From Macrostomum lignano (Eukaryota), in contig NIVC01001060.1 in NCBI GenBank assembly GCA_002269645.1, positions 1 through 64,000 of the forward strand: DNA of 64,000 bases, given 5' to 3'. The first letter of the stretch is position 1; each line of letters opens with the position of its first letter. Made by a program: the position numbers and the translations under genes. Of the stretch, positions 8,591-32,483 are shown one piece after another. The notes below the pieces were generated by a model. It was not told where the DNA came from, did not search any database, and was given only the letters and a program-made list of their open reading frames with translations.

Positions 8591-9320
8591 TAGCCATGGT
8601 TATTAATTCTAGGGAATTTCTAAAAATTTTAGGCATATAAGTAAATTTTTGCTTAGTTTTTAAATTGATAACAAGGGGGACTTAGTGCAATCTTAAAGCT
8701 ATTAGGGAAATTAGTAAAATGCAATGGCTCTTGGAAAGAATTACAAGGATGTCAAGGCTTATTGGGTAATTTCTAAAATGCTTTGGCTTTTAAAAGAACC
8801 TGCTAATATGTCAATGCTTATTGTGGAATTGAGGCTCATTAGGGAGTTGCTAAAATGCTAAAGCTCAAGGCTAATACTGTAATAGCAAAATGAATCATTA
8901 AGATGCTACAACCTACTCATAGTGCTATATAAAATTAGGGTTAGGATTCAACAATATAAAAAATTTCCTTTGTCAACTATAAAGTGCTCATGGGATAATT
9001 ACTGAGATGCCAATGATTTACATAATAATTTTTTGAAATTTCAAGGCTTATTGGGGAAATTGCACAATATTAGGGCTTACAAGAAGATAGATATCAAAGC
9101 GCATAGAAGAGTTATTAAGATGTCAAGGCTCTTAGGTGTTGCTAAATTGCTAAATTACTTATTGAATCTGTCTCTATTAGAAAGTTTTCCAATATTGCTT
9201 TTATAATAGTTCTAGGTTAGGCTTAATTTTTGATATAATTCAGTTTCTAGATATAGCCTGATAAAAAAAATGATAAAGTTATTAACAAATTTTGTTATAA
9301 TGTATCCCTTGTAATGTTTT

Positions 9321-9323
9321 CAG
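9321..9323 (+). promoter_or_regulatory. Candidate trans-splice (or 5'UTR) acceptor of EIPR1
   Basis: TTTTCAG|TGTC 26 nt before the ATG; the same TTTTCAG|TGTC precedes VPS26C. Confidence 0.5.
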
Positions 9324-9349
9324 TGTCTATCATTAAATCAGAAATCAAG

Positions 9350-11812
9350 ATGGACATTGATGATCCACCAGTAATCTATGGCCTAGAGACCCAGGCCAGA
9401 GCCCTGTGCTCAGTGCCAGCCTTAGATGACAGCCAGCAGTTTATTATTGGCACTCAAGGCCTTCGAGTTGAGCACAATCAGCTGCATTTATTGACATTTG
9501 ATGCCGACTCCAATAGTGTTAGCAAAAGAATATTTGATCATGGCCGAGATGAGATCTGGTCTGTGTCTGTGGCGCCGCATAACCCCAATCTGTGTGCTAC
9601 TGTTTTTAACAGGTTAGTAGGGTTTTGTTTAATTTTGGTGCTGTTTCAATCTATTTAGCACTATTTGTATCTATTTGGCGCTATTTCCAACCATTTGGTT
9701 CCATTAGAGTCTATTTGGCGCCATTAGAATCCATTTGGCGCCAGTAGGGTCAATTTGGCGCCATTCGAATCCGTTTGGCGCCATTCGAATCCGTTTGGCG
9801 CCATTTGAATCCGTTTGGCGTCATTTAGATATATTTGGCGTCATTATATTTCATTTGGCGCCATTTTCGGATCCATTTGGCGCCATTCGAATCCATTTGG
9901 CGTCATTAGAGTCTATTTGGCGCCATTAGAATCTATTTGGCGCCATTCGAATCAATTTGGCGCCATTCGAATCCATTTGGCGCCATTTGAACTCACTCAA
10001 GTTATTAAATATGACGCAATTGAGATTTTCCTAGCGTCATTTAGACAATTAGATTTAATTGGCATCATTGCGTAGACTTATCAGGCGTCATTAAGTTTAA
10101 TTTTAGGCTCACAGAAAGGTGACTAATAATAAATTATTCAAATTTACCACTTCATTAATTTAGGGTAACCATGGACTCGGGCACGAATCCAAGCGTTGCT
10201 AAGCGCTGGTGCCTATGGAAACTGCCAGAAGAAGAAGACAACCAGACGCCTCGGCATCGAAATAGCTCAGAGGACGCTCTAACCTCGTCTTCATTGTCCT
10301 CAGTTGAATCTCTGCAATCGATTGGTTCTATTGAACTCGAGCAGCAGGGTGAGCCGCGCTGTTTAGCGTTTCATCCGGAAAGAGCGGAAGCCGTGCTGGT
10401 ATCTGACGGCGGGCTGTATCAGCTGGGCCTCGGCAGCGGTGCGGTCCGTCTGTTGGCTCACCTGCCAGCTAAAGACGGTCGATCTCAACTGCGGTACTGG
10501 CATGCGGCTTGGAACCCTCATCATTCTGCTCAGCAGGTGATCGCCGCCTGCGATTCTGGCGGATTAAGAGGCTTCGATGTTCGCTGCCCGCCTAGCGACG
10601 GCCCGGTTGTTGTCATTGACAACGCGCATAATGGACAGGTAAACAGATTGGCATTAGAAATGGCCTTTAAACCTACCCAAGAACCATCTTTGAAACTCAT
10701 GATAGGTCGTCTCAGAAACCTACCCTAAATCACCCCCTAGAAACCTACCCTAAATCACCCTCTAGAAACCTACCCTAAATCACCCCTTAGAAACCTACCC
10801 TAAATCACCCTCTAGAAACCTACCCTAAATCAACCCTAGAAACCTACCCTAAATCACTCCCTAGAAACCTACCCTAAATCACTCCCTAGAAACCTACCCT
10901 AAATCACTCCCTAGTAACCTACCCTAAATCACTCCCTAGTAACCTACCCTAAATCACTCCCTAGTAACCTACCCTAAATCACCCCTAGAAACCTACCCTA
11001 AATCACCCCTAGAAACCTACCCTAAATCACCCCTAGAAACCTAACCTAAATCACCCCTAGAAACCTACCCTAAATCACCCCTAGAAACCTAACCTAAATC
11101 ACTCCCTAAAACCTACCCTAAATCACCCCTAGAAACCTAACCTAAATCACTCCCTAAAACCTACCCTAAATCACCCCTAGAAACCTAACCTAAATCACTC
11201 CCTAAAACCTACCCTAAATCACCCCTAGAAACCTACCCTAAATCACCCCCTAGAAACCTAGCCTAAATCACTCCCTAAAATCTACCCTAAATCACTCCCT
11301 GAAACCCAGCTAAGTAAGCGCCTAAACCTACCCACCACAAGGCTCGGTGCGTGGACTACAACCCGAACAAGCAATACTATTTAGCCAGCTCCGGAGATGA
11401 TGGTGCAATCAGATTCTGGGACACCCGACAACCATCCAATCCTGTGAAGATGCTTCGCCTACACAAGCACTGGGCCTGTTGCGTCCAATTCAACCCCTAC
11501 CATGATCAATTGGTACTGTCTGGCGGTACTGACGCTAAAGTTTATCTAACTAATAATCGTAGCATCTCGTCCGAACCGGTACTGTCTCTAGACGACGATC
11601 TAGACGATGATGACGATGACGACGATAGACGACAGCAGCAGCCAGAGCTAGACGAGGATCGCACTGTGTCAGTTGTTGAAGAACACGAGGATAGCGTCTA
11701 TGCCGCTGTGTGGTGCGCAACGGATCCTTGGCTATTCGCGTCCTTGAGCTACGATGGTCGCCTAGTGATTAGTCACGTGCCTAAAAGCGAGAAGTATCGC
11801 ATTTTGTTGTGA
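9350..11812 (+). CDS. EIPR1: EARP/GARP-interacting WD40 protein (TSSC1/EIPR1), 3 exons, ~402 aa
   Basis: Exons 9350-9612, 10164-10638, 11342-11812 join in frame at GT/AG sites; motifs MDIDDPPVIYGLETQARAL, DYNPNKQYYLASSGDDG, EEHEDSVYAAVW, LSYDGRLVISHVPKSEKYRILL match the EIPR1 family. Confidence 0.95.
9665..9995. repeat. 20-bp minisatellite (GAATCCATTTGGCGCCATTC)n, EIPR1 intron 1
   Basis: Visible periodicity. Confidence 0.9.
10715..11300. repeat. 24-26-bp minisatellite (AGAAACCTACCCTAAATCACCCCT)n, EIPR1 intron 2
   Basis: Visible periodicity; fills most of the intron. Confidence 0.95.
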
Positions 11813-11899
11813 TTAATTTTGCTTTTGTTTTCATTTCTATTTGCAATTTTGGCGCTTCCCTGACACGTTTTGGTCCCATCTGACACCTTCCGTTTGACG

Positions 11900-12765
11900 C
11901 TAAACCTGACACCAATTAGATTGGCGCTCTATCTGACACCAATTAGATTGGCGCTCCATCTGACACCAATTAGATTGGCGCTAACCCTGACACCAATTAG
12001 ATTGGCGCTCCATTTGACACCAATTAGATTGGCGCTAACCCCTAACACCAATTAGATTGGCGCTCCATCTGAAACCAATTAGATTGGCGCCCTGACATCA
12101 ATTAGATTGGCGCTAACCCTGACATCAATTAGATTGGCGCTCCATCTGACACCAATTAGATTGGCGCCCTGACATCAATTAGATTGGCGCTAACCCTGAC
12201 ATCAATTAGATTGGCGCTAACCCTGACATCAATTAGATTGGCGCTCCATCTGACACCAATTAGATTGGCGCCCTGACACCAATTAGATTGGCGCTAATCC
12301 TGACACCAATTAGATTGGCGCTAACCCTGACACCAATTAGATTGGCGCTAACCCTGACACCAATTAGATTGGCGCTAACCCTGACACCAATTAGATTGGC
12401 GCTAACCCTGACACCAATTAGATTGGCGCTAACCCTGACACCAATTAGATTGGCGCTAACCCTGACACCAATTAGATTGGCGCTAACCCTGACACCAATT
12501 AGATTGGCGCTAACCCTGACACCAATTAGATTGGCGCTAACCCTGACACCAATTAGATTGGCGCTAACCCTGACACCAATTAGATTGGCGCTAACCCTGA
12601 CACCAATTAGATTGGCGCTAACCCTGACACCAATTAGATTGGCGCTAACCCTGACACCAATTAGATTGGCGCTAACCCTGACACCAATTAGATTGGCGCT
12701 AACACTAACACCAATTAGATTGGCGCTAACCCTGACACCAATTAGATTGGCGCTAACCCTGACGA
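11900..12765. repeat. 24-bp minisatellite (CTGACACCAATTAGATTGGCGCTAACC-type) after the EIPR1 stop
   Basis: Visible periodicity; unit contains the hairpin CCAAT-TAG-ATTGG. Confidence 0.95.
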
Positions 12766-13394
12766 GCGCCTTCCACCTGCTAGACTATTGAATCCAAACC
12801 TGTTTAAAATCTGTTTGAAATAAAGATTTTGTGGAATTAAATTCTGTATATTTTGTTAAAATTTTATTTCAGAAAAATTGTTTTATTGTATTTCATGTTA
12901 GATTAACTTAATAGTCAAACATATTAACTTGTTTCTTGCGTTGTTAATTTACTTTATGCTTAAGCATACAATTAGTCGTTGAAATATGTTTATGATTTGT
13001 TAATCTTTTGTGTTGTTAGAAGGCTTCTAAATGAATATATAGTAATTGTAAAATATATAGTGCCAATCTGGTTAAAATTATCTTCCTTTTTATGTTGTCT
13101 TGTCTCTTATACAAAAATAACCTTTTAATAAGTTCGTCTAAATATTATATCATTAATTATTATCAATAGAGATAGAGCCATATAGTATATTGTCATTTTT
13201 ATATTCTACTCGTAATCATATATCTGAGAGACTCACTGACTGAATTAAAGATTGTCTAAGAAAAAACCATTGGTATAAGTTAAGTAAGTTAAGTAGAACC
13301 GGTCCCGGTTAGTACTTTACTGATTGCCTCGGTAGAGTATTCAGTAAAGTACTCAATAAAATACTTAGTAGATTAGTGAGTAGATTAATCAATG

Positions 13395-13935
13395 GTATAC
13401 TCAGTAGAATACTCAGTAGAGTACTCAGTAGAATACTCAGTAGAGTACTCAGTAGAATACTCCGTAGAATACTCAGTAGAATACTCAGTAGAATACTCAG
13501 TAGAATACTCAGTAGAGTACTCAGTAGAATACTCAGTAGAGTACTCAGTAGAATACTCAGTAGAGTACTCAGTAGAATACTCAGTAGAGTACTCAGTAGA
13601 ATACTCAGTAGAGTACTCAGTAGAATACTCAGTAGAATACTCAGTAGAGTACTCAGTAGAATACTCAGTAGAGTACTCAGTAGAGTACTTAGTAGAATAC
13701 TCAGTAGAGTACTCAGTAGAATACTCAGTAGAGTACTCTGTAGAATACTCAGTAGAGTACTCTGTAGAATACTCAGTAGAGTACTCAGTAGAATACTCAG
13801 TAGAGTACTCAGTAGAGTACTTAGTAGAGTACTTAGTAGAATACTCAGTAGAGTACTCAGTAGAATACTCAGTAGAGTACTCAGTAGAATACTCAGTAGA
13901 GTACTCTGTAGAATACTCAGTAGAGTACTCAGTGG
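13395..13935. repeat. 12-bp minisatellite (AGTAGA(A/G)TACTC)n
   Basis: Visible periodicity; contains the palindrome GAGTACTC. Confidence 0.95.
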
Positions 13936-14056
13936 AATAATCGCAATAACTTACGTATCCTAAATAATTTGTGACCATAATTTCTATTCATGATTTTCAC
14001 AATAGAAACATTGACGTTTGAAAATCATAAATCTTGGAAGTATTGACACCGATCGG

Positions 14057-15280
14057 ATGTCTTCATCGTCTGACACTTCGCTGGCATCGGCCATGCGCGG
14101 TCGGTACACGCTGAAGATTGGCGACACGTTCGGTTCAACACCGGCCGCCAGGAATCGAGCAAGTTTCTCTACGTTTCGCTACGACTTCATGCCAGCCAGT
14201 GTGGACCAGTCTAAGCCGGGTCTGGTTGAGGTCGGCTCTACAGACGATGTCACGGTTTCGCTTGCTCACGGCTCCGCTAGCAGTCTGTCGCACACTATTT
14301 TCAAAGGTCACAAGCGTCCGTGTCACAAGGATGCCGTGTTAATTCTTGACCCGATCACTCGCGAGGCTCGTATTGAGCGAGTGAATTTGAACGTACAATT
14401 AAAGAAGGCTAGGATTGAAGTGTGCCAATTAGATTTGGTTGAAAAGAAGCTGGGCATGAAAGCGGCTGAAGCGGCATCGGCGGCTACAACTGTGCCGAAA
14501 AAGTCTTCTTCTTCTAGTGGCACTGTTTCTGGTTCGAATAGTCACAAGCAGCCGTCTGTGCAAGCTTCCCATAGAAAGATATCGTCTAGTGAGACTGGTA
14601 AAAGCAAGCCCGAGAAAGCTGCCTCACAGCAGCAGCAGCAGCAGCCACAGAAGAAAAAGAAAAAGAAACACGAGCACGGGACAGACACGGAAGCCGAAGC
14701 TGAGGCTAAACGCGAACGTGAACGCGAAAAAGAACGAGAGAAAGAGAGGGAAAGAGAACGGGAGAGAGAGCGAGAGCAGGAGAGAGAAAAGAAAAAAGCT
14801 CAAAAGAAAAAGGAACTGGAGCAGCAGCAGAAAAAGCAGAAAAAGCAGCCACAACCGCCGGTTGCTAAAAAGTCGAAATCTGAAAAAGTTGTGGCCGCCG
14901 CCACTCTTTCTGATGCTTCATCGGTGTCTTCAGTTTCATCTTCTTCGTTATCCTCATCAGACGATGACGATTCAGATGCTAAGAAGCCTACTCAAGCCCC
15001 GCAGAAGCCGAAATTAAAGAAACAACAACAAAAGTCTTCTCAACCGGCTAAGCCGGCAGTTTTAAATTCTAACGACGATGACGATTCTGTCTCGTCTGAT
15101 TCTTCCGCCTCTTCCGATGAAGAATTCGTCGAAGTCGTCAGTCAGCCTCCAGCGCAGCCTGCAACAACAGCTGCTGCTGTTACTGTTACCACCGCAACAT
15201 CTGCCGCTCCGACAAAAGTGCTCAGCGATTTGGAATTGTTGCAGAATGATCTACAGCTTAGCGATAGCGATACCGATTGA
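14057..15280 (+). CDS. EAF1: ELL-associated factor (EAF1/2 family), intronless, ~407 aa
   Basis: EAF domain (YTLKIGDTF..SFSTFRYDFMPASVD..TIFKGHKRPCHKDAVLI..VQLKKAR) and C-terminal LQNDLQLSDSDTD; candidate acceptor TTTTCACAATAG ending at 14005. Confidence 0.93.
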   Translation: MSSSSDTSLASAMRGRYTLKIGDTFGSTPAARNRASFSTFRYDFMPASVDQSKPGLVEVGSTDDVTVSLAHGSASSLSHTIFKGHKRPCHKDAVLILDPITREARIERVNLNVQLKKARIEVCQLDLVEKKLGMKAAEAASAATTVPKKSSSSSGTVSGSNSHKQPSVQASHRKISSSETGKSKPEKAASQQQQQQPQKKKKKKHEHGTDTEAEAEAKREREREKEREKEREREREREREQEREKKKAQKKKELEQQQKKQKKQPQPPVAKKSKSEKVVAAATLSDASSVSSVSSSSLSSSDDDDSDAKKPTQAPQKPKLKKQQQKSSQPAKPAVLNSNDDDDSVSSDSSASSDEEFVEVVSQPPAQPATTAAAVTVTTATSAAPTKVLSDLELLQNDLQLSDSDTD

Positions 15281-15519
15281 TGATGAAGTGAACACATTCA
15301 ATTTGATCGTGCTCGGGCTAGAATATTTACTATAAGAAATTTGATTTAAATCGTCAGTCTAACCACATCAGTAATAACAAACGTCAGCTTAGATTATGAT
15401 TTTATATAAAACTACACCTTGTATACACTGTGATTTGCTATAAAATGAGGCTAATGTTTATTGAAAAGTATCGATACACGAGTACAACGTCTGAACCTAT
15501 CTTAAACATTCGACTAAAC

Positions 15520-15717
15520 CAGGGGTCGGCACCCTTTTTACCTCAAGATAGAAGATAGAATAGGGAAAAGAGGTGGGATGAAGGAGAGGCGAGGAAATAA
15601 CAGAAGAGAGAAGAGAGCTCAGCGAACCCTTGGGCCGGTCGGTTTGCTATTGTAAGGTTTAATAGGACCCGAGGGCCGGATAGAGAGGCTTTGTGGGCCG
15701 AAGTTTTCCGCCTCCTG
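15520..15717. mobile_element. Decayed hAT (Charlie-like) MITE
   Basis: Left end CAGGGGTCGGCACCC, subterminal GGGCCGGA / GTGGGCCG, degenerate right end CCGCCTCCTG. Confidence 0.5.
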
Positions 15718-15964
15718 AAGTAAAAATTCTCTTCAAGACCTCAATCTGACTTGCGTAGTACGCCTTGGAGTGGAGTGGTACTCCTTGCACAAGATTGGTG
15801 GTTATTGTTTCTAGAGTGACGCTCCTTGTGTCCAGAGTGGCATGTTGTGGGATGATGAAAAAGATAAAGAGCGTTGCATTTAATTTAAAACAGAACAGAC
15901 AAATAAAAATTTAATTTAATTTTCAATCGCAATTGCGGGGTTGAAAGAAAAGCAAATTAAGAAA

Positions 15965-16150
15965 GAGCCTGTCAACTTAAGCTCATGAAGTGGAGCCCAA
16001 GTAACCTATTTGCCCGAATGATACGTCATTCTGCTCACAGTGACACTTGGAAGCTAAGTTTGGCAAAAAACAACAAAATTGGACTTGGGATAGAGAACTA
16101 GCAAGGGGATGATAAAAGACACCACTTTATGAACTTAAGTTGACAGGCCC
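15965..16150. mobile_element. MITE with ~23-bp TIRs (PIF/Harbinger-like terminus)
   Basis: GAGCCTGTCAACTTAAGCTCATG ... ATGAACTTAAGTTGACAGGCCC; no TSD recognised. Confidence 0.65.
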
Positions 16151-16514
16151 TTTGAATTTTCTTATGATTTATAATGCCTTGAACTCCGTTAGCCTGCAGA
16201 AGAATGTGAGAGGGGATTACACTTGTCATAATTATTGACCCCTTGTCTGAATTTGTTTTAATAAAATCTAACATAAGTTTTTGTCTGCTTTCCTAGTTAA
16301 ATGTGACATGTTCCATTGCATACTCTAAAATTGATTGCATTCAATAAATTATATAATCACGGTGATTGTTATCATTTTCATGTGCAGTTCGGCCTTTCAT
16401 AATTGTTAAAATATGTTAAAATTGTTTTAAAAAAATAAAAAAAGTATTTATTTAAATTTAGATATTATCTTAGCAAGTGACATAACAAGTTAAGCAGTCC
16501 CAGGTCTCAGGAAG

Positions 16515-16808
16515 TAGGCATGGGAGTACAGGAAGTAGACACGGGAGTACAGGAAGTGGACATAGGAGTACAGGAAGTAGACATGGTGGCACAGGAAGTA
16601 GACAAGGGACCACATGAAGTAGACATGGGGGCACAGGAAGTGGACATGGGAGTAAAGGAAGTGGACATGGGAGTACAGGAAGTAGACATGGGAGTACAGG
16701 AAGTAGACATGGGGGCACAGGAAGTAGACATGGGAGTACAGGAAGTAGACATGGGAGTACAGGAAGTAGACATGGGAGTACAGGAAGTAGACACAGGGGT
16801 ACAGGAAG
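16515..16808. repeat. 21-bp minisatellite (CATGGGAGTACAGGAAGTAGA)n
   Basis: Visible periodicity directly upstream of the SURF1 acceptor. Confidence 0.95.
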
Positions 16809-16854
16809 GTACAAGTTTGCGCGCTCGCAACTGTTAAATTTCTTTTTCTTGCAG

Positions 16855-19513: not shown

Positions 19514-19689
19514 TGGAAGATACATCATAATCTGTGTACTATACATATGCTCTCAGAATTATTTTAGTACTTTATTGACCTATTAAATATTTCATGAAAA
19601 TTATTGTGCTTTTTTAAATAGGCTTCTTACATGGTTTTTCGTTCTTGACTATTTATTTTTCTTTGTTTTAGACATGCTGGGCCCATGCT

Positions 19690-20400
19690 AGAGTTGCTGG
19701 GCCCGCCTCCCAGATCCCCAGTTGCTGAGCCAGCCTCCTAGATCCTCCGTTGCCGGGCCAGCAGCTCCCCAGAGTGTCAGTTGCTGGGCCAGCCTCCCAG
19801 ATCCTCAGTTGCTGGGCCAGCCTCCCAGATTGTCAGTTGCTAGGCCAGCCTCCTAGATTGTCAGTTGCTAGGCCAGCCTCCCAGATCCTCAGTTGCTGGG
19901 CCAGCCTCCCAGATTGTCAGTTACTGGGCCAGCCTCCTAGATTGTCAGTTGCTAGGCCAGCCTCCCAGATCCTCAGTTGCTGGGCCAGCCTCCCAGATAG
20001 TCAGTTACTGGGCCAGCCTCCTAGATCCTCAGTTGCTGGGCCAGCCTCTCAGATCCTCAGTTGCTGGGCCCGCCTCCCAGATCCCCAGTTGCTGAGCCAG
20101 CAGCTTCCCAGAGTGTCAGTTGCTGGGCCAGCCTCCCAGATTGTCAGTTGCTGGGCCAGCCTCCTAGATTGTCAGTTGCTAGGCCAGCCTCCCAGATCCT
20201 CAGTTGCTGGGCCAGCCTCCCAGATTGTCAGTTACTGGGCCAGCCTCCTAAAGTGTCAGTTGCTGGGCCAGCCTCCCAGATCCTCAGTTGCTCGGCCAGC
20301 CTCCCAGATTGTCAGTTGCTGGGCCAGCCTCCTAGATTGTCAGTTGCTAGGCCAGCCTCCCAGATCCTCAGTTGCTGGGCCAGCCTCCCAGATCCCCAGT
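19690..20400. repeat. ~28-30-bp minisatellite (CAGTTGCTGGGCCAGCCTCCCAGAT(TGT/CCT))n in the SURF1-GTF2H2 spacer
   Basis: Visible periodicity. Confidence 0.93.
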
Positions 20401-20474
20401 GAATCATATTGCCAGTCAGTCAAGCAGGCACAGCCCCATGCTTATGCATGCCAAGAGTTTGAACAGCAAACAGC

Positions 20475-22711
20475 ATGGCAAACTACGGATTCGCAAAGCC
20501 GTCTGCGCGACCCACAGCGGGCACCAGCGGCTACCGGCTTCAGGACGAGGATGCGGCCGCGCTCTCTGGCGGCGGCTTTCGCTGGGAGTCGCAGTTCGAG
20601 CGCTCCTGGGAGGCCCTGGCTGAGGATGAGGAGGGTCGCCTGGCTGGGGCTGTTGGGCGTCTGGAGCAGGTGGGTGAATTGTTATTGGGCTCATTGGACT
20701 TATTTAGTTAGCTAGTCAGTCAGTCAGTCAGTCAGACAGTCAGTCAGTCAGTCAGTCAGTCAGTCAGTCAGACAGTCAGTCAGTCAGACAGTCAGTCAGT
20801 CAGTCAGTCAGTCAGTCAGTCAATCAGTCAGTCAATCAGTCAGTCAGTCAGTCAGTCAGTCAGTCAGTCAGTCAGTATCGAACCCCAAACCCCGCAGGCC
20901 CGCAAGCGCCGGCACCGTCTCGCAGCGGCAGCCCTGCTACCCGGCGGCGGTGGCCGGGCCAGCAAGCTGGGCATGATGCGGCACCTGCTGCTGTGCCTGG
21001 ACTGCTCAGAGACCATGGGCTTGGCCGATCTCAAACCCTGCCGTTTAGCCGCCTGCCTATCCGCAATGCGCAACTTCGTGTCCGGATTCTTCGATCAGAA
21101 TCCCATCGGACAGCTGGGCGTACTGCTGACCAGACGGAAGCTGGCCGAGAGAGTGACCGAGCTCACTGGCAATCCCAGGCGACATTTGGACGCGCTAAAA
21201 GATTTGGCTCAGGCCGGCTCGGGCAAAACCGCCCGTCCCGAAGGGGAGGCGTCATTTCAGAACCTGCTGGAGATGGCCTACGACACGCTGGGCCCCCTGC
21301 CAGGCCACGCCTGCAAAGAGGTTCTCGTGCTGGTGTCAGCCTTGAGCACCTGCGATCCGGGAGATATCGGTGCGACCATTAGCAAACTGGCCAAGGCTAG
21401 GATCAGGTGTTCGGTGAGTGAATCATTTCTGTCTGCCTTTTTTTCTTTTATTGTTACTGTTTTTCAAGTCCTAGATCTGTACCCTTCCTACCCTCCTTTC
21501 CCTCTACCCGCTTTCCTCTAATTACCCTCCTTCCCCTCTACCCGCTTTCCCCTCTCTACCCGCCTTGCCCTCTCTACCTGCTTTCCCCTCTACCCGCTTT
21601 CCCCTCTACCCGCTTTCCCCTCTACCCGCTTTCCTCTCTCTACCCGCCTTCCCCTGTCTACCCACCTTCCCCTCTCCACCCGCTTTCCGCTCTACCTGAT
21701 TTCCGCTCTCTCTCGCGTCTCCGCTTCCCTTTCTCTCATTTTACCCTCCCCCCCTTAGATCTCTCCCCTCTATCCTCACTCTCGTCTATCCTTTCTCTAC
21801 CCTCTTTACCCTCTTTCTAATTACTTTCTACCTGATTTCCTCTCTCTCTCTCTCGCGTCCCCGCTTCCCTTTCTCTCATTTTACCCTCCCCCCCCTTAGA
21901 TCTCTCCCCTCTATCCTCACTCTCGTCTATCCTTTGTCTACCCTCTTTACCCTCTTTCTACTTTCTCCCAACGCTTTCCTTCCTAGCCTCTCTCCATCTC
22001 TCTGTCTCTGTTCCGCCATGATGCGTCAAGGGCAAAGTGCAAGCTCTAGGGAACATTGTTTTACCTTCTAAACCTTGCCAATTGGCGTCCCTTTCCCATA
22101 AATTGCCCAATTTACAGGTAATATCTCTGTCAGCGGATATTCGCGTATTGCGCAAACTCGCCCAGGCCACTGGTGGCACCTACTCTGTGCCGCTAGACGC
22201 TGTCCATCTGTCCGACATCATGTCCAGCTTCCTGCCGCCGCCGGCCAGCGCTCCCGATCCCGCTCTGATCAAAATGGGCTTCCCCTACTCGGCTGGGCAG
22301 GATGGCCAGGAGCAGCCGAGATCCAAGCAGGATGTCATCCGCATTTGCGCCTGTCACGGCACCGTACTATCAGCCGGGGCCACCGCTCACGCCTGCCCCC
22401 AGTGCGCCTGTCTTTACTGCGAGCTGCCGGTTGATTGTCGGATTTGCGGATTAAGTTTGGCCAGCGCCGCTCACCTGGCCAGATCCTATCAGCACCTGTT
22501 CCCGTTGAAGGCATTCGCCGAGGTCACCTTGGCGGCCAGTACGGGCTGTTGCGGATGTGGCGATAGACTAGGCGCTAACACGGAAGCCTACCAGTGCAGC
22601 GACTGTCGGTCTCATTATTGTATCGATTGCGATCGGCTGTTGCACGACTCTTTGCACTCTTGCCCAGTTTGTTTGCAGACTTTATCGGTTAAAACTACTA
22701 TCGCTACTTAG
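20475..22711 (+). CDS. GTF2H2: TFIIH p44 subunit (SSL1/GTF2H2), 3 exons
   Basis: Exons 20475 (or 20544)-20669, 20898-21413, 22118-22711 join in frame; RWESQFERSWEAL, LGMMRHL, FFDQNPIGQLG, HLARSYQHLFPL, C-terminal Cys-rich finger. Confidence 0.96.
20712..20875. repeat. (TCAG)n microsatellite, GTF2H2 intron 1
   Basis: Visible. Confidence 0.95.
21480..22010. repeat. C/T-rich minisatellite (CTCTACCCGCTTTCCC-type) plus a ~125-bp duplication, GTF2H2 intron 2
   Basis: Visible. Confidence 0.85.
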
Positions 22712-23236
22712 TAGTATAAAAGAATAATATTTGTGCGCTAACAAAACTTTTGTACCTGAGCCAGTAAGTAACTTGCTTGATAAAGATTGAGAACACCGGG
22801 AGTAAAGTAGATAAGTAGTCTTTATCTTTATTCAACACATTGGTTCACAGTGAGAGGTCCAGTGGTACATGCATTAGTCACACGTCAAGCATTTAAAACT
22901 TTGTTTGCTCTAATAATACACAATACAATAACTGCCTAATCGATGCAAAAGTATTTCGTACGTTGTGACAGGTGTTTTTTTACTTTATTAACTCTCTTCT
23001 GTGCCTTATATTTGTTTATTTTCATAAGTAGCATTCAAAGGAATACTTTCGGCTTTTTATATTGTCTAATACAATTAGGTCTACCGCTGTAGTCTCAGTT
23101 ATTCTGTTAAAACGCTTAATATTTAGTATATAGGACTATCAGCTTTGCCCCCCTCGGGGGTAACTTACGCTGACAACATTAGAACTGAAATTTGTCATTT
23201 TTGTCATCTAAAATCATTAAGATCAACCGCTACTAC

Positions 23237-23455
23237 GGCGGTTGTAGCCTAGTGGTTATTAAAGCGTCGGATTCATGACTAGGTCCCGGGGGTTCGATTC
23301 TCGACCCACTCACAACAATTTGTGTCCTTGAGCAAGACACATTGACTCTGCATTGCTTCAGTTGCTTCAATTGCTTCAGCTTTAAAATGGGTGCCCCCCA
23401 GTCCTTGGAGTGGAGCAATAACTACGGCTGAGCTGTCGGTTGTACATCTGGCTAT
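23237..23455 (+). mobile_element. tRNA-derived SINE with a CORE-like central domain
   Basis: A box TAGCCTAGTGGTTA, B box GGTTCGATTCTC, then GTGTCCTTGAGCAAGACAC and TAAAATGGGTGCC; homologous to copies at 34577-34841 and 35172-35290. Confidence 0.85.
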
Positions 23456-23536
23456 TAGGTCAGGTGTAATTAATTACCATGTGTTTCTAATATATTTCAA
23501 CTCCATCTATTTTTCAGTGTCAACTCTACAACCGCA

Positions 23537-24436
23537 ATGGCAGCCACTTTAGACATTCGTTTGAAGCGTATTAACAAAACCTACACCGATGGCGACACAA
23601 TCTCCGGCTATGCCGTGATTCGTTGCAAACAAGACTGCGGTCACAATGGTCTCACATTGAATCTGACTGGCACAGTGAGCATGCAGCTTAGCTCAAAAAA
23701 TGTCGGAGTATTCGAAGCATTCTATAACAGTATCAAGCCGATTCAACTGACCGGAGCCACACTAGAACTAGCTAAGCCTGGCAAATTCACCACCGGATTA
23801 ACAGAAATCCCATTTGAAATACCGTTCAAATCCAAGGGTAACAAAACACTGTATGAGACATACCACGGAGTGTTCATTAACATTCAGTACGTGCTTCAGT
23901 TGGACTTGAAACGCTCTCTATTGAACAAAGATCTCAGCAAAACTTGCGAATTCTTAGTCGAATACAATCCAAAGAATTCTGGCCAACCGAGCTCGCAGAC
24001 GCCAGTAACTTTCGCCATCAGCCCGGACAGTGTAGTCAATGTTCAGAACAAGGCCAGTCTACCGAAATTTCGCGTCACCGGCCAACTCACATCGAGTCAC
24101 ATTAGTATTTCTGAGCCACTGAGTGGCGAGCTAGTCATTGAGCAGTGCGCTACTCGGATTAAAAGTGTAGAACTGCAGCTGGTACGCGTAGAGACCTGCG
24201 GCTGTCTGGAAGGCTACGCTAAAGAGACTACTGAGATACAGAATATCCAAGTGGCTGATGGAGACGCTCCCAGAGGGATTAAAATCCCTCTGCACATGGT
24301 GCTGCCGCGTCTGTTCACCTGTCCGAGCGTTTCGGCTACCAATTTCCGAATCGAATTCGAAGTCAACATTGTTGTCGTGTTTCAAGACGACTATTTGGTG
24401 TCTGAAAATATTCATATTCGTGTTAGTAGATTCTGA
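23537..24436 (+). CDS. VPS26C: Retriever subunit VPS26C (DSCR3), intronless, 299 aa
   Basis: TLDIRLKRINKTY, YETYHGVFINIQY, SVELQLVRVETCGCLEGYAKETTEIQNIQVADGD, LPRLFTCP; TTTTCAG acceptor ending at 23517. Confidence 0.96.
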   Translation: MAATLDIRLKRINKTYTDGDTISGYAVIRCKQDCGHNGLTLNLTGTVSMQLSSKNVGVFEAFYNSIKPIQLTGATLELAKPGKFTTGLTEIPFEIPFKSKGNKTLYETYHGVFINIQYVLQLDLKRSLLNKDLSKTCEFLVEYNPKNSGQPSSQTPVTFAISPDSVVNVQNKASLPKFRVTGQLTSSHISISEPLSGELVIEQCATRIKSVELQLVRVETCGCLEGYAKETTEIQNIQVADGDAPRGIKIPLHMVLPRLFTCPSVSATNFRIEFEVNIVVVFQDDYLVSENIHIRVSRF

Positions 24437-24574
24437 TCTGTTGAAGTTGATGATTTAAAACAATTCCTAATTTAAAAGCGATGGTTCTGTAAACGTCTAT
24501 GTAAAAAGGCTGGCTATTGAATTAGATAACGAAGTAGACGGTGTCCGTTGAATGCCATTTTTGTCTAATTAACA

Positions 24575-24699
24575 GACACTTAGACAGGCAGACAGAAAGG
24601 CGGGCAGACAGACTGTCAGACTGACAAACATACTGACAGACAGACACGCAGACAGACAGGCAGGCAGGCAGACAGACAGGCAGACAGGCAGACAAAGGC

Positions 24700-24736
<37 letters not shown>

Positions 24737-24849
24737 GGCAGACAAAGGCAGGCAGACAGACAGACAGACAGACAGACAGACAGGCAGACAAAGGCAGGCA
24801 GATAGGCAGGCAGACAGACAGGCAGACAGAAAGGCAGACAAAGGCAGGC

Positions 24850-24886
<37 letters not shown>

Positions 24887-24903
24887 GGCAGACAAAGGCA
24901 GGC

Positions 24904-24936
<33 letters not shown>

Positions 24937-25103
24937 GGCAGACAAAGGCAGGCAGATAGGCAGGCAGACAGACAGGCAGACAGAAAGGCAGACAAAGGCA
25001 GGCAGACAGATAGGCAGACAGACAGACAGGCAGACAGACAGGCTGACAGAAAGGCAGGCAGATAGATAGGCAGGCAGACAGACAGGCAGACAGAAAGGCA
25101 GGC

Positions 25104-25136
<33 letters not shown>

Positions 25137-25264
25137 CTAAGACAGACTGTCAGACTGACAAACATACTGACAGACAGGCAGACAGACAGACAGGCTGACA
25201 GAAAGGCAGGCAGATAGATAGGCAGGCAGACAGACAGGCAGACAGAAAGGCAGGCAGACAGACC

Positions 25265-25300
<36 letters not shown>

Positions 25301-25495
25301 CTAAGACAGACTGTCAGACTGACAAACATACTGACAGACAGACAGGCAGAAAGGCAGGCAGACAGACAGATAGACAGGCAGGCAGGCAGACAGAAATGCA
25401 GGCAGACAGAAAGGCAGCCAGACAGACCGACAGATAGATGGACTGACTGACTGACTGACACTCAGATAGACGGATACACAGACAGACAGACAGCC
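24575..25495. repeat. (GACA/GGCA)n compound microsatellite with internal block duplications
   Basis: Visible. Confidence 0.95.
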
Positions 25496-26204
25496 TCTAA
25501 CATTCAGCATTCACAGGACAATTTCATTCGTGTTAACTACAATCAACGCACCTTCCTAAAATGCTTCCTAATTTTCATAGAACTTGGAAACATAAAAACA
25601 CGCAGAAAACGTTATATTGCCATTCGCAGTTATTTTGCGACAACACGTTAAGATTTGTTGGTTTCTGCCATAGACAGTAGCGCTCAACAAAACAAATGTG
25701 ATTAAAGTATATGTGCTAATTTATAGGAAAGCTCGTTAAGTCCTATCTTAAGCAAATTTAATCCTGATTAATTCAATCCTAGTACTGTGAGAAAAAACTA
25801 TCAAATTTTGTTGTTTAATAGCACCAGAGTATTAAAAATTGCTTAGCTTTTATCACATATATCTACAGATTGATGGACACTAAAAAATTGCTAATCATCC
25901 TGTATACTTACAGTAGTCAGTCGCTAATTTGCATAATTTTACAGTAGGACTGTGCTAAAAATATTTTACTAAAGTACTCGTAATCCCGAGTCCTAATTCA
26001 ATAAATCATTATGTAATAGTGTTCATCATCTATAGCAGTACATGTATCTTTGATTATTGATTTTTTTACATTTATACGCTCGTAAAAGTTGGATTTTCTA
26101 TTTTTACATTTACCTTTGTGCTAGGATTTAGATTGATTGTCATCAACTGATATCATATATTAGAGATGTTGTTAAGTTCATGTATTTGCAACTGTTTTAT
26201 GGAA

Positions 26205-26480
26205 GACAGACAGGCTGACAGACAGACAGAAAGACAGGCTGACAGACAGACAGGCTGACAGACAGACAGGCGGAAAGACGACACTAAGACAGGCAGACAG
26301 ACAGACACTAAGACAGACAGACAGACAGACACACTAAGACACTAAGACAGACAGACAGACAGACACACTAAGACACTAAGACAGACACACTAAGGCACTA
26401 AGACAGACAGACAGACATACTAAGACACTAAGACAGACAGACAGACAGACACTAAGACAGACAGACAAACAGACAGAAAG
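26205..26480. repeat. (GACA)n / ACACTAAG compound repeat
   Basis: Visible. Confidence 0.9.
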
Positions 26481-26556
26481 CGTGATACTAATACTGATAT
26501 TTTCAATCACATACTACTAATATACATCCATAATTCCGCCGCTGCCGTCAGCAGAG

Positions 26557-26571
26557 ATGAATCGCCAGTAG
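26557..26571 (+). promoter_or_regulatory. uORF1 (M-N-R-Q-stop) of the ATF4-like leader
   Basis: ATG AAT CGC CAG TAG. Confidence 0.65.
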
Positions 26572-26646
26572 CCCCAGCTACACCGCTGCGCCCCGAAAGG
26601 CCAGACAGTCAAAGAAACGCAACGAAAACCCAACACAGACGCCAAC

Positions 26647-26823
26647 ATGGCCACCTTTACCTGCCAGTCAACTCAGTGCTCAAAGTACAACAAGACTACT
26701 GCTACTAATACTACTACTACTACCAAGCATAATCACTTCTGCAAGCATGACTGCCAACATGGCTTCAATGGTGACTCCGCCAATGACGGATGCCAGTGGT
26801 GGAGATTTCTCTTCATATCTTAA
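26647..26823 (+). promoter_or_regulatory. uORF2 (58 aa), overlapping the main ORF out of frame by 77 nt
   Basis: GCCAACATGG context; open to TAA at 26821-26823; spans main-frame ATGs at 26747, 26759, 26768 and 26783. Confidence 0.7.
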
Positions 26824-27947
26824 TCTCTGTCAGGATGCTCGTCACGCTGAGCAAGGCGTTGAGCTGCTCCTGTCATCCGCATCAGTTTGGCTAACTGATT
26901 CGCTGTTGCCAAAGTCCGGCCCAGCCTCCCATCGTACGGACGATGATGATGAAGTGTCATCGGTGCTTGACGGCTTCCCTAGCAACAGTGCCGTTGCTGA
27001 TGACGCCGAGATGGATAGTATTTTCCCATTTCTAACGCCAGAATCGGCAGATACTGCTGGTGCTTCGGCTGTTCGCGACTGTCTTCTCGACTTGGACGGT
27101 GTCGACTTTGATGTCGATGAGTTGATGCCGCCGGATCGACCGGTTTTCGACGATGGTGATGATGACGACGCAGATGAAGATTTGGTGATGTCATCGTCAT
27201 TGACGTCGTCTGTCGATCAGACGCCACCGCCGCAGGTGCTGCCTCGCAGAGGCAGAGGCAAAGGCGGCGGTTTCGGCAGGAAGTCGAAATCTTCTAATAT
27301 GAGGACTAAAGGCGAGGCTAATCGAGAGGCTGCCTATCGGTTAGTTGCTAACTGATGCCCACTCTGTGTATTGCTGACTCCCCCTCTCGGACCCCCTCTG
27401 ACCTCTCGGGCCTCCCCCTCCCTGATCGCTCCCTCCCGGACCTCCCCCTCTCTGACATCCCCCTCGCCGACCTCTCCCTCTCGGACCTCCCCCTCTCTGA
27501 CCTACCCCTCTCTGATTACCCCTTCTCCGACCTCCCCCTCACTGACGTTCCCCTCTCTGACTCCCCCTCTTTAGCCTCCCCCTGATCTCTTCCTCTGTGA
27601 ACTCCCCTCTCTGATATTTCCTTTATCAAGTCTACACGCCCCAACAGTCGCACACACAACGCCAAGCCCTGCCCCCCGCCCTCAGATACAGAGCAAAGCA
27701 ACGCCAATCCAACTCGCTGGCCAAGTCCCGACACTCGCAACTGGTTGCCGACAATCAACGTCTGGAAGCTGAAGTGGCATCGGCCGAGAGCCAACTGCAG
27801 TTCCTGCTGCACCTGTGCCGCAGGAGGCCAACGCCAGCTAAGAAGCGACTGCAGCTAAGAATTTTAGAGGCCGATGAAGATTGCGATCCACCGCAGCTGG
27901 GTTCGAAACCCAAACTTATCACCATGGTTTTTAAACACCGGGTTTGA
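26747..27947 (+). CDS. ATF4: ATF4/ATF5-like bZIP transcription factor, 2 exons, ~284 aa
   Basis: Exons 26747-27339 and 27686-27947 join to give KGEANREAAYRYRAKQR..QLVADNQRLEAEVASAESQLQFLLHL (compare ATF4 EQNKTAATRYRQKKR..IQYLKDL); acidic N-terminal region. Confidence 0.75.
27365..27620. repeat. 15-bp C-rich minisatellite (CCTCCCCCTCTCTGA-type), bZIP intron
   Basis: Visible. Confidence 0.85.
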
Positions 27948-31922: not shown

Positions 31923-32139
31923 AGTATGCGCGCTGCTGTCATTTGATGCCAATTGACACCATGCATATCAGGCGGGCATGTAGGTTGCAGCTGAGAAGCT
32001 AAAAGCATACTTCTGCCAACTCTATCAATTCCCACCTATGCTTCTAGGCACATTCTCAAGACAAAAATTGTCAGTCAGCAGCCTCAGAAAATGAATCGCT
32101 TCTAAAGCGAAATAAGCAATATTTATGATCTGAGCTGCT

Positions 32140-32290: not shown

Positions 32291-32483
32291 TTTTTGCAGA
32301 CGGGGTAAGGCCTGAAGCGTAAAGCCTCTCAGTCCTTCTTGCTGTATTTTAACCAATCGGAGGTAAGACGCAACTGTAAACCTTTATAATGTATAAAATG
32401 GATTGCTGTGGTCTCAAACTTGTTAACTTCAATCCTTGACCTGCAACGCCTATAGAAAGCTGAAGAAAGTTTGTCAATATATC

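What the first reader, a model, noticed from the sequence alone, without database searches (positions are those of the whole stretch)
9317..27947. Candidate trans-spliced operon of up to six conserved genes
EIPR1, EAF, SURF1, GTF2H2, VPS26C and an ATF4-like gene lie head-to-tail on + with gaps of about 2.2, 1.6, 1.0, 0.8 and 2.3 kb, filled mostly by tandem repeats or small TEs. Each has a candidate AG acceptor shortly before the coding start with no evident upstream exon (9323, 14005, 16854, 20543, 23517, 26551/26554); TTTTCAG|TGTC is identical for EIPR1 and VPS26C. SL trans-splicing and polycistronic units are established in flatworms. The cluster pairs two endosomal recycling factors (EIPR1, VPS26C) and three Pol II factors.
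Basis: partly seen in the sequence, partly recalled or inferred. Interest (0 to 1): 0.75.

Follow-up and report, generated by a model that had tools for sequence, protein, structure and literature searches.

The report
Six-gene trans-spliced cluster in Macrostomum
Six conserved housekeeping genes lie head to tail in the flatworm Macrostomum lignano, and most show signs of receiving the spliced leader, so this is probably one more of the repeat-swollen operons already catalogued in this genome; co-transcription itself could not be tested here.

Summary
The window is contig NIVC01001060.1 of the Macrostomum lignano Mlig_3_7 assembly. All six genes are real and lie head to tail on the + strand: EIPR1, EAF, SURF1, GTF2H2/Ssl1, VPS26C and an ATF4-like bZIP.

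- **SURF1:** it has no genomic start codon, and the ATG that ends the SL falls in frame.
- **GTF2H2 and VPS26C:** the assembly was polished with RNA-seq, which overwrote bases just 5' of the junctions with the SL's 3' end (TGCATG) in some of the three near-identical copies. Another copy keeps the true TTCCAG or TTTTCAG acceptor.
- **EIPR1 and VPS26C:** the deposited 5'-partial coding sequences start at the first in-frame codon after the AG.
- **EAF and bZIP:** evidence is weak.

It lies inside the ORF, and the real junction is 20450|20451.

Stop-to-acceptor distances minus tandem repeats are 711, 1270, 234, 806 and 922 nt. This roughly fits the published M. lignano operon criterion of less than 1 kb after repeat subtraction.

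Polycistronic transcription itself was not testable. Independent promoters remain a serious rival. The phenomenon is already described genome-wide, so interest is low to moderate.

The parts
9317..9323 (+). EIPR1 trans-splice acceptor TTTTCAG|TGTC
   Evidence: It matches [T/C]TNCAG. The deposited 5'-partial CDS (PAA72797.1, 410 aa) starts at 9326, the first in-frame codon after 9323|9324. The site is identical in copy B.
9324..11812 (+). EIPR1 gene: exons 9324-9612 (ATG 9350), 10164-10638 and 11342-11812
   Evidence: The model was built (402 aa). It is 100% identical to the M. lignano protein P0123 and 42% identical to echinoderm EIPR1. Pfam finds Beta-prop_EIPR1.
11813..14005 (+). Spacer 1 (2193 nt), with a 27-mer array at 11894-12763 and a 24-mer array at 13328-13939
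   Evidence: TRF results: 68% tandem repeat, 711 nt non-repeat.
13979..14005 (+). EAF 5' boundary, unresolved: AG at 14004-14005 (AATAG|AAAC), or junction 13992|13993 after TTCATG
   Evidence: The AG is present in all three copies. Copy C reads TGCATG|ATTTTCAC at the position equivalent to 13992, which is the SL's last 6 nt, but a fuzzy scan does not make this significant. Deposited CDS starts disagree among the copies: 14024, three nt later, and the ATG.
14057..15280 (+). EAF coding sequence, single exon
   Evidence: Pfam EAF, 64.6 bits. ORF.
15281..16851 (+). Spacer 2 (1571 nt), with a MITE-like inverted repeat at 15962-16153 and a 21-mer array at 16508-16808
   Evidence: 19% tandem repeat, 1270 nt non-repeat.
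16846..16854 (+). SURF1 trans-splice acceptor(s): TTGCAG|TCC (16854). Three nt upstream, copy C reads AG| where the window reads TG| (16851).
   Evidence: Both junctions put the SL's terminal ATG in frame with the SURF1 ORF. Copy C's deposited CDS starts directly after its AG.
16852..19513 (+). SURF1 gene: exons 16852/16855-17302, 18029-18253 and 19221-19513. There is no genomic in-frame ATG before the conserved first transmembrane helix.
   Evidence: Model. Pfam SURF1, 152 bits. The ORF opens without an ATG, and the first in-frame ATG is in KELMAKS, after WFLAFPAICFCLGTWQVYRRQWK.
19514..20450 (+). Spacer 3 (937 nt), with ATTAAA at 19582 and a 28-mer array at 19692-20394
   Evidence: 75% tandem repeat, only 234 nt non-repeat.
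20442..20450 (+). GTF2H2 trans-splice junction 20450|20451. In this assembly the true acceptor is overwritten with the SL 3' end (TTATGCATG|CCAAGAG).
   Evidence: The window and copy B read TGCATG, while copy C reads TTCCAG| at the same place. It is the only + strand hit to the SL 3' 10-mer (up to 2 edits) in 9-28 kb. The assembly was polished with RNA-seq.
20475..22711 (+). GTF2H2/Ssl1 coding sequence: exons 20475-20669, 20898-21413 and 22118-22711
   Evidence: Model (434 aa, the same length as the deposited product). Pfam Ssl1 and C1_4.
22712..23517 (+). Spacer 4 (806 nt, no tandem repeat), containing a tRNA-like SINE-type fragment at about 23238-23310
   Evidence: ARAGORN finds no tRNA.
23511..23517 (+). 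VPS26C trans-splice acceptor TTTTCAG|TGTCAAC
   Evidence: Copies B and C read TTTGCATG|TGTCAAC at the same place. This is the only 4-in-4 substitution cluster in 35 kb of window-versus-copy-B alignment. The deposited CDS starts at 23519.
23537..24436 (+). VPS26C coding sequence, single exon
   Evidence: Pfam Vps26, 160 bits. It is 57-62% identical to its closest animal VPS26C hits.
24437..26544 (+). Spacer 5 (2108 nt), with AGAC-type arrays at 24582-25493 and 26204-26477
   Evidence: 56% tandem repeat, 922 nt non-repeat.
   Evidence: The three copies read CGCTG|, GGATG| and CCATG| before an invariant CCGTCAGCAG. This is the second tight substitution cluster in the 35-kb comparison.
26557..26823 (+). 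ATF4-type upstream ORFs: uORF1 26557-26571 (MNRQ*) and uORF2 26647-26823 (58 aa), which overlaps the main ATG out of frame
   Evidence: Both are invariant in the three copies.
26747..27947 (+). ATF4-like bZIP coding sequence: exons 26747-27339 and 27686-27947
   Evidence: This is the unique model giving the deposited 284 aa. bZIP_2 is above its cut-off. The basic region is NREAAYRYRAKQR, and the best PDB hit is ATF-4.

Best explanation
This is a head-to-tail cluster of six conserved housekeeping genes in Macrostomum lignano. Their mRNAs are capped by trans-splicing of the single 35-nt spliced leader (SL), CGGTCTCTTACTGCGAAGACTCAATTTATTGCATG.

The most likely arrangement is one operon, or two to three adjoining ones, of the repeat-inflated type already catalogued for this genome.
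- Pol II starts in the gene-free, AT-rich region upstream of EIPR1.
- It reads through spacers that minisatellites and small transposable elements have swollen to 0.8-2.2 kb.
- Each downstream cistron is released by 3' cleavage and polyadenylation of the gene in front, together with SL addition at a [T/C]TNCAG acceptor 20-30 nt before its start codon.

For SURF1, the ATG that ends the SL serves as the start codon. For the bZIP gene, the SL ATG would extend the first of two ATF4-type upstream ORFs.

Shown here: the gene identities, order and strand; acceptors beyond chance; and indirect records of SL-exon junction reads. Inferred: co-transcription and a single promoter.
For: **Identity of the locus**
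- The window is NIVC01001060.1 of Mlig_3_7.

**Evidence for SL trans-splicing**
- The assembly was polished with Pilon using RNA-seq, so SL-bearing reads can overwrite genomic bases just 5' of an acceptor.
- GTF2H2: the window and copy B read TGCATG|CCAAGAG, while copy C reads TTCCAG|.
- VPS26C: the window reads TTTTCAG|TGTCAAC, while copies B and C read TTGCATG|.
- In 35 kb of window-versus-copy-B alignment, tight substitution clusters (3 or more mismatches within 5 bp) occur at only two sites. Both lie immediately 5' of predicted junctions.
- SURF1 has no genomic start codon before its conserved transmembrane helix. The SL ATG is in frame at 16851| or 16854|. Use of the SL ATG as initiator in flatworms is established (Cheng et al. 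2006, cited in PMC12582326).
- The deposited 5'-partial CDSs start at the first in-frame codon after the AG for EIPR1 (9326) and VPS26C (23519).
- The [T/C]TNCAG motif is enriched at the gene starts (P about 3e-5).

**Evidence for an operon**
- The same gene order is seen in the three near-identical copies: all six genes in copy B, EAF to bZIP in copy C, whose EIPR1 region could not be fetched.
- Five of the cluster's genes carry consecutive accessions in copy B, PAA94265-94269.
- No CDS is annotated in the 9.3 kb upstream of EIPR1, or in 10 kb upstream of it in copy B.
- Stop-to-acceptor distances minus tandem repeats are 711, 1270, 234, 806 and 922 nt. The published criterion is less than 1 kb after repeat subtraction, and repeats are reported to inflate operon spacers in this species (PMC8629364).
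- The SURF1-to-GTF2H2 spacer leaves only 234 nt for a 3'UTR, a spacer and any promoter.
Against: - No direct RNA evidence spans any spacer.
- About 60% of SL trans-spliced genes in M. lignano are not in operons.
[quoted passage not shown] The spacers are therefore long enough for internal promoters.
- Locus-tag prefixes differ between EIPR1 and VPS26C on the same contig, so the published RNA-seq assembly did not join them into one transcriptional unit.
- SL evidence for EAF and bZIP is weak.
- The EAF-to-SURF1 non-repeat distance (1270 nt, including the 3'UTR and a MITE-like element) is above 1 kb as measured here.
- Six-gene operons are rare in the published catalogue: 75% have two genes, 18% have three, and the maximum is nine.
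Confidence: 0.55

Rival explanations
1. The six genes are independently transcribed and merely lie in the same orientation. Each has its own promoter in the spacer upstream and an outron that is removed by SL trans-splicing. No polycistronic RNA is made.
For: - Most SL trans-spliced genes in this species are monocistronic.
- The spacers hold 234-1270 nt of non-repeat DNA.
- In the reporter constructs of PMC5730564, upstream regions of up to 2 kb were sufficient.
- The deposited annotation gives different transcriptional-unit prefixes to cluster members.
- Five consecutive same-strand junctions arise by chance in about 3% of cases.
Against: - The SURF1-to-GTF2H2 spacer has only 234 nt of non-repeat DNA, and that includes the SURF1 3'UTR.
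- Repeat-adjusted distances fall in the range that the published bimodal distribution assigns to operons.
- The authors note that RNA-seq transcriptional units tend to break in repeat-rich operon spacers, so separate units do not count against an operon.
Confidence: 0.3
2. The cluster is a hybrid. One or two short operons, most likely SURF1-GTF2H2 and perhaps also VPS26C, are embedded in a run of independently promoted, trans-spliced neighbours.
For: - The shortest repeat-adjusted spacers are SURF1-to-GTF2H2 (234 nt) and GTF2H2-to-VPS26C (806 nt, including a SINE-like fragment).
- The strongest SL evidence is for exactly these three genes.
- 93% of predicted operons in this species have two or three genes.
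Against: Nothing here separates this from the full six-gene model. The remaining spacers also fall to about 1 kb or less once the unknown 3'UTRs are subtracted.
Confidence: 0.15

Closest known systems
Macrostomum lignano repeat-inflated SL operons (Ustyantsev & Berezikov 2021, PMC8629364; transcriptional units of Wudarski et al. 2017, PMC5730564)
   Same: Same genome assembly and the same single 35-nt SL. The genes are adjacent on one strand, conserved and housekeeping. The acceptor motif is [T/C]TNCAG. The spacers are dominated by tandem repeats and shrink to roughly 1 kb or less once these are removed.
   Different: Six genes is well above the usual two or three. I could not confirm that this cluster is in their list, or that all members are annotated as trans-spliced. 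One spacer measures 1270 nt by my cruder method (stop codon to acceptor, TRF only).
Caenorhabditis elegans operons (SL2-type)
   Same: Polycistronic Pol II units are resolved by coupling 3' end formation to SL trans-splicing. They are enriched for housekeeping genes with no necessary functional link.
   Different: C. elegans uses a dedicated SL2 and spacers of about 100 nt. M. lignano has one SL, so SL identity cannot mark downstream cistrons. The raw spacers here are 0.8-2.2 kb.
Parasitic flatworm operons (Schistosoma, Echinococcus; PMC12582326)
   Same: A flatworm SL ending in AUG, which can donate the start codon (Cheng et al. 2006). Candidate operons are defined by strand, proximity and SL acceptors.
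   Different: Those studies use thresholds of 300 bp or less, and the S. mansoni median spacer is 99 bp. A text search of that paper's supplementary files for these gene names found nothing.
Vertebrate ATF4/ATF5 uORF-controlled bZIP genes
   Same: A basic region with the RYR signature. A very short uORF1 and a roughly 58-codon uORF2 that overlaps the main start codon out of frame.
   Different: Only weak sequence similarity outside the bZIP domain (ATF-4 E=0.08). The leader is supplied in part by a spliced leader. Regulation is untested.

Membership tests
M. lignano SL operon (criteria of PMC8629364) | Immediately adjacent genes on the same strand, not interrupted by an opposite-strand transcript | tested here: met
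   The deposited CDSs are consecutive on the + strand in the window and in copies B and C. Accessions PAA94265-94269 are consecutive in copy B. Non-coding transcripts could not be checked.
M. lignano SL operon (criteria of PMC8629364) | The downstream gene of each pair is SL trans-spliced | tested here: inconclusive
   Indirect proxies support SURF1 (SL-donated ATG), GTF2H2 and VPS26C (SL 3'-end footprints left by RNA-seq polishing). Evidence for EAF and bZIP is weak. No SL reads were available.
M. lignano SL operon (criteria of PMC8629364) | Intergenic distance below 1 kb after subtracting tandem repeats and transposable elements | tested here: inconclusive
   Stop-to-acceptor distances minus TRF are 711, 1270, 234, 806 and 922 nt. 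Four of five are under 1 kb. The fifth still includes the EAF 3'UTR and a MITE-like element. Poly(A) sites and RepeatMasker tracks were not available.
Operon in the strict sense (any SL-operon system) | A single primary transcript spans the cistrons from one promoter | not testable with these tools
   No RNA contigs for these genes are in the searchable collections. No TSS or chromatin data were available.
C. elegans-type operon | Spacers of about 100 nt and a specialised downstream SL (SL2) | tested here: not met
   Raw spacers are 806-2193 nt. M. lignano has a single SL.
ATF4-like bZIP | A bZIP domain with an ATF4-type basic region, and a two-uORF leader in which uORF2 overlaps the main start codon | tested here: met
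   PF07716 scores 25.6 bits against a cut-off of 22.3. The best PDB hit is ATF-4, though weak at E=0.08. uORF1 is at 26557-26571 and uORF2 at 26647-26823, overlapping ATG 26747 out of frame. Orthology was not tested by phylogeny.
SL-donated initiator AUG (Cheng et al. 2006) | The ORF lacks its own AUG upstream of essential conserved sequence, and the SL 3' AUG is in frame at the acceptor | tested here: met
   SURF1 has no in-frame ATG between the upstream stop and KELMAKS, which lies after the first transmembrane helix. Junctions 16851| and 16854| are both in frame. The deposited CDS is 5'-partial in all three copies. An upstream cis-spliced exon is not formally excluded.

The most novel reading that the evidence does not exclude
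All six genes are made from one primary transcript of about 18.6 kb or more. Its intercistronic spacers reach 2.2 kb and are up to 75% minisatellite, and repeat arrays at the locus differ up to about ten-fold in length between near-identical genomic copies (for example the 24685-25454 array in spacer 5: 770 versus 74 nt). This would be one of the largest flatworm operons. It would also show that coupling of 3' end formation to SL trans-splicing tolerates kilobases of variable satellite DNA between cistrons.

A second, methodological reading: RNA-seq polishing has overwritten true trans-splice acceptors with SL sequence throughout the Mlig_3_7 reference. That would bias published acceptor-motif statistics, in which the motif was found at only 9551 of 21754 sites.
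Probability: 0.3. Interest if true: 0.45.

Novelty: new member of a known kind. Interest (0 to 1): 0.27.

Why it matters
If all six genes are co-transcribed, this would be an unusually large flatworm operon. It would be a convenient test case for how SL trans-splicing and polyadenylation stay coupled across long, repeat-filled and length-variable spacers.

Two practical points are useful now, whatever the outcome.
- **The Mlig_3_7 reference carries RNA-derived SL sequence in place of some real acceptor sites.** One example is GTF2H2 in this window. This can mislead splice-site prediction, motif statistics and the design of guides or promoter constructs.
- **SURF1 in this species appears to depend on the spliced leader for its start codon.** Any transgene or knock-in design for it must take that into account.

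Tried and rejected
- **SL or SL RNA gene in the window:** none found, down to the SL's last 12 nt on either strand.
- **RNA-level evidence from public assemblies:** the protein clusters hold only genome-derived entries, and an exact-product look-up of VPS26C found no transcript contigs.
- **Look-up of the EAF protein:** it was not in the collection.
- **Supplementary tables of three papers:** searches for locus tags or gene names found nothing.
- **SL footprint at EAF:** the site reads TTCATG, or TGCATG in copy C. A fuzzy scan with the SL 3' end does not lift it above background, so it is left as a lead only.
- **Other footprint sites in the window:** scans with the SL 3' 10-mer and 7-mer gave nothing convincing beyond GTF2H2.
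- **Rfam and ARAGORN on 1-36 kb:** no hits.
- **Cross-species synteny:** not attempted with the last protein search. Flatworm orthologues did not reach the top 120 hits in the two earlier searches, so neighbours could not have been retrieved.
rejected, because it lies inside the ORF.

Full report
**Where the window comes from**

The VPS26C ORF retrieved its own database entry on GenBank contig NIVC01001060.1 of assembly GCA_002269645.1. Window coordinates equal record coordinates. [quoted passage not shown] Cluster members carry M. lignano names: PAA72797.1, PAA94265.1, PAA94269.1 and PAA68453.1.

**Checking the observation**

All six genes are real.
- Pfam gives EIPR1 beta-propeller, EAF, SURF1, Ssl1 plus TFIIH C1, and Vps26.
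- The sixth gene carries a bZIP_2 domain above the curated cut-off. Its closest solved structure is ATF-4, weakly.

I built exon models that reproduce the deposited product lengths for SURF1, GTF2H2 and bZIP; my EIPR1 model runs from its ATG.

| Gene | Coordinates |
|---|---|
| EIPR1 | 9324-9612, 10164-10638, 11342-11812 |
| EAF | 14057-15280 |
| SURF1 | 16852-17302, 18029-18253, 19221-19513 |
| GTF2H2 | 20475-20669, 20898-21413, 22118-22711 |
| VPS26C | 23537-24436 |
| bZIP | 26747-27339, 27686-27947 |

The statement that the gaps are mostly tandem repeats or small TEs holds for three of the five spacers. The tandem-repeat fractions are 68%, 19%, 75%, 0% and 56%. Tandem repeats make up 49% of the whole window and 52-91% of the introns of these genes. 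They are a property of the genome, not of the spacers.

**The acceptors**

Ustyantsev & Berezikov (PMC8629364) report [T/C]TNCAG as the motif at M. lignano trans-splice sites.
- On the + strand of 9-28 kb this motif occurs only 25 times.
- It sits at 9323 (27 nt before the EIPR1 ATG), at 16854 (at the opening of the SURF1 ORF) and at 23517 (20 nt before the VPS26C ATG).
- With the GTF2H2 site found in a sister copy, that makes four of six genes. The binomial P is about 3e-5. This is more than chance.

It lies inside the GTF2H2 ORF, whose N-terminus (GGFRWESQFERSWEALAEDEEG) begins from ATG 20475, and no in-frame ATG follows 20543. The AG at 14005 is real but a poor motif match.

**An unexpected source of evidence: SL footprints in the assembly**

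M. lignano DV1 carries duplicated chromosome material. The same gene order occurs on NIVC01000012.1 (copy B; all six genes) and, from EAF to the bZIP, on NIVC01001395.1 (copy C; its EIPR1 region could not be fetched).

At the VPS26C junction the window reads ctaTTTTTCAG|TGTCAAC, but copies B and C read ctaTTTGCATG|TGTCAAC. Four consecutive substitutions remove the AG. They create TTGCATG, the last seven bases of the SL CGGTCTCTTACTGCGAAGACTCAATTTATTGCATG, exactly abutting the exon.

At GTF2H2 the situation is reversed.
- Copy C reads gcttaTTCCAG|CCAAGAG, a perfect acceptor 24 nt before the ATG.
- The window and copy B read gcttaTGCATG|CCAAGAG.

The Methods of Wudarski et al. explain this. The Canu assembly was polished with Pilon using Illumina DNA and RNA-seq mapped by STAR. 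Reads that begin within the last few SL bases would align with terminal mismatches. Where RNA depth is high, they would flip the genomic bases.

These footprints are thus a record that SL-exon junction reads exist at 20450|20451 and 23517|23518. In an anchored alignment of 35 kb of the window against copy B, tight substitution clusters (three or more mismatches within 5 bp) occur at only two sites.
- One is the VPS26C junction.
- The other is 26538-26542, just 5' of an invariant CCGTCAGCAG in the bZIP leader. There the three copies read CGCTG|, GGATG| and CCATG|.

I read the bZIP cluster as a messier footprint. It places the bZIP junction at 26544|26545 rather than at 26551/26554, with moderate confidence only.

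**SURF1**

The SURF1 reading frame is open from the acceptor region. It contains no ATG until KELMAKS, which lies downstream of the conserved first transmembrane helix WFLAFPAICFCLGTWQVYRRQWK.
- The deposited CDS is 5'-partial in all three copies.
- The SL ends in ATG, and both candidate junctions put that ATG in frame. The first is TTGCAG|TCC at 16854. The second is 3 nt upstream, where copy C has ctAG|CAG and the window has ctTG|CAG.
- The A-to-T difference at the second site again matches the SL base at that position.
- Copy C's deposited CDS starts directly after its AG.

Use of the flatworm SL AUG as the initiator is established (Cheng et al. 2006, cited in PMC12582326). This is independent and fairly strong support for trans-splicing of SURF1.

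One point is unexplained. The deposited CDS in the window and copy B starts at 16867, after ctttcaT|TGTCAAC. That site has no AG, although it resembles the VPS26C acceptor TTTCAG|TGTCAAC.

**EIPR1 and EAF**

For EIPR1 there is no footprint. The deposited partial CDS starts at 9326, the first in-frame codon after 9323|9324. That is what a TransDecoder ORF on a transcript cut at a trans-splice peak would give.

For EAF the evidence is weak and inconsistent.
- The deposited starts are 14024 in the window, three bases later in copy B, and the ATG in copy C.
- This hints at a junction at 13992|13993, but a fuzzy scan does not lift it above background.

**Is it an operon?**

The published operon definition for this genome has three parts: adjacent genes on the same strand, a trans-spliced downstream gene, and an intergenic distance below 1 kb after subtracting tandem repeats and TEs. 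Repeats visibly inflate operon spacers in this species, and the corrected distances peak near 100 bp.

My cruder measure runs from stop codon to acceptor and subtracts TRF hits only. It gives 711, 1270, 234, 806 and 922 nt. These figures still include the unknown 3'UTRs, a MITE-like inverted repeat and a tRNA-like SINE fragment. The SURF1-to-GTF2H2 spacer leaves almost no room for a promoter.

Other points bear on the question.
- No CDS is annotated in the 9.3 kb upstream of EIPR1, or in 10 kb upstream of it in copy B. This fits EIPR1 being the first cistron.
- Against a single unit, about 60% of trans-spliced genes in this species are monocistronic.
- In the published reporter constructs, up to 2 kb of upstream sequence was enough to reproduce expression patterns.
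- The locus tags of EIPR1 and VPS26C on one contig have different prefixes. The authors themselves warn, however, that RNA-seq units break in repeat-rich spacers.

No RNA contigs, TSS data or cross-species gene order could be reached with the tools.

I put about 0.55 on the cluster being at least partly operonic and of the published kind. I put about 0.3 on all six genes sharing one transcript, and about 0.3 on fully independent transcription.

**Comparison with known systems, and novelty**

The cluster works like the M. lignano operons already described genome-wide. That catalogue has 10,458 genes in operons, mostly in pairs and triplets, with a maximum of nine.

It differs from C. elegans operons in having a single SL and kilobase-scale raw spacers. 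It differs from the candidate operons of parasitic flatworms in spacer length.

It is best filed as a new, unusually long candidate member of a known kind. Membership in the strict sense, meaning one primary transcript, is untested.

The by-products are of modest practical interest: SL footprints that corrupt real acceptor sites in the reference, an SL-donated start codon for SURF1, and an ATF4-type two-uORF leader.

Noticed in passing
window 20445-20450; L002 9992-9997 and L003 9993-9999 (VPS26C junction); window 26538-26544: The Mlig_3_7 reference carries the 3' end of the spliced leader (TGCATG) in place of genuine trans-splice acceptors in some copies. The likely cause is that Pilon polishing used RNA-seq reads. 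The true AG of GTF2H2 is missing from this window. If this is widespread, it could bias published acceptor-motif counts, in which the motif was found at 9551 of 21754 sites.
   Followed up: partly
window 16852-17302: SURF1 has no genomic start codon before its conserved first transmembrane helix. The ATG that ends the spliced leader is in frame and is the probable initiator.
   Followed up: yes
window 26557-26823: The bZIP gene has an ATF4-like leader, invariant in all three genomic copies. It has a 4-codon uORF1 (MNRQ*) and a 58-codon uORF2 that overlaps the main ATG (26747) out of frame. With a junction at 26544|26545, the SL ATG would extend uORF1 to 9 codons.
   Followed up: partly
window 16860-16873 versus 23511-23524: SURF1 reads CTTTCAT|TGTCAAC and VPS26C reads TTTTCAG|TGTCAAC, a 13-mer with one mismatch. 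The deposited SURF1 CDS in the window and copy B starts exactly at this TGT (16867), although no AG precedes it. This is unexplained.
   Followed up: partly
window 23238-23310: A tRNA-like fragment with A- and B-box-like motifs (TAGCCTAGTGG ... GGTTCGATTCTCG) lies in the GTF2H2-VPS26C spacer. ARAGORN does not call it a tRNA and it does not fold better than shuffles, so it is probably the head of a tRNA-derived SINE.
   Followed up: partly
L004 7285-9572 (copy B), insertion point equivalent to window ~8903-8913: Copy B carries a 2288-bp insertion about 410 bp upstream of the EIPR1 acceptor. It has terminal inverted repeats (ACATGCGCAAC...), an apparent 11-bp target duplication (ATGCTACAACC) and internal tandem repeats. 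It looks like a non-autonomous DNA transposon and is absent from the window.
   Followed up: partly
window 15962-16153: A MITE-like element in the EAF-SURF1 spacer: 32-nt inverted arms, 91% complementary, 128 nt apart.
   Followed up: no
window 18311-19086, 24685-25454, 29841-31923: Minisatellite arrays differ greatly in length between the window and copy B (776 vs 147, 770 vs 74 and 2083 vs 163 nt), while the unique sequence is about 98-99% identical. Array length appears unconstrained in both introns and spacers.
   Followed up: partly
window 32436-33233 (+): An open 265-aa ORF with a cysteine pattern that looks like a C-type lectin lies about 4.5 kb downstream of the bZIP gene on the same strand. 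No CDS is called there in the record for this copy. It was not scanned against Pfam.
   Followed up: no
L003 18165-20598 (-): Copy C has three long minus-strand ORFs (216, 149 and 427 aa) downstream of the cluster. They look like genes of a mobile element or virus-like element. They were not analysed.
   Followed up: no
window 52000-64000: GC skew is strongly and uniformly negative (about -0.44) over the last 12 kb. This suggests one very long tandem array.
   Followed up: no
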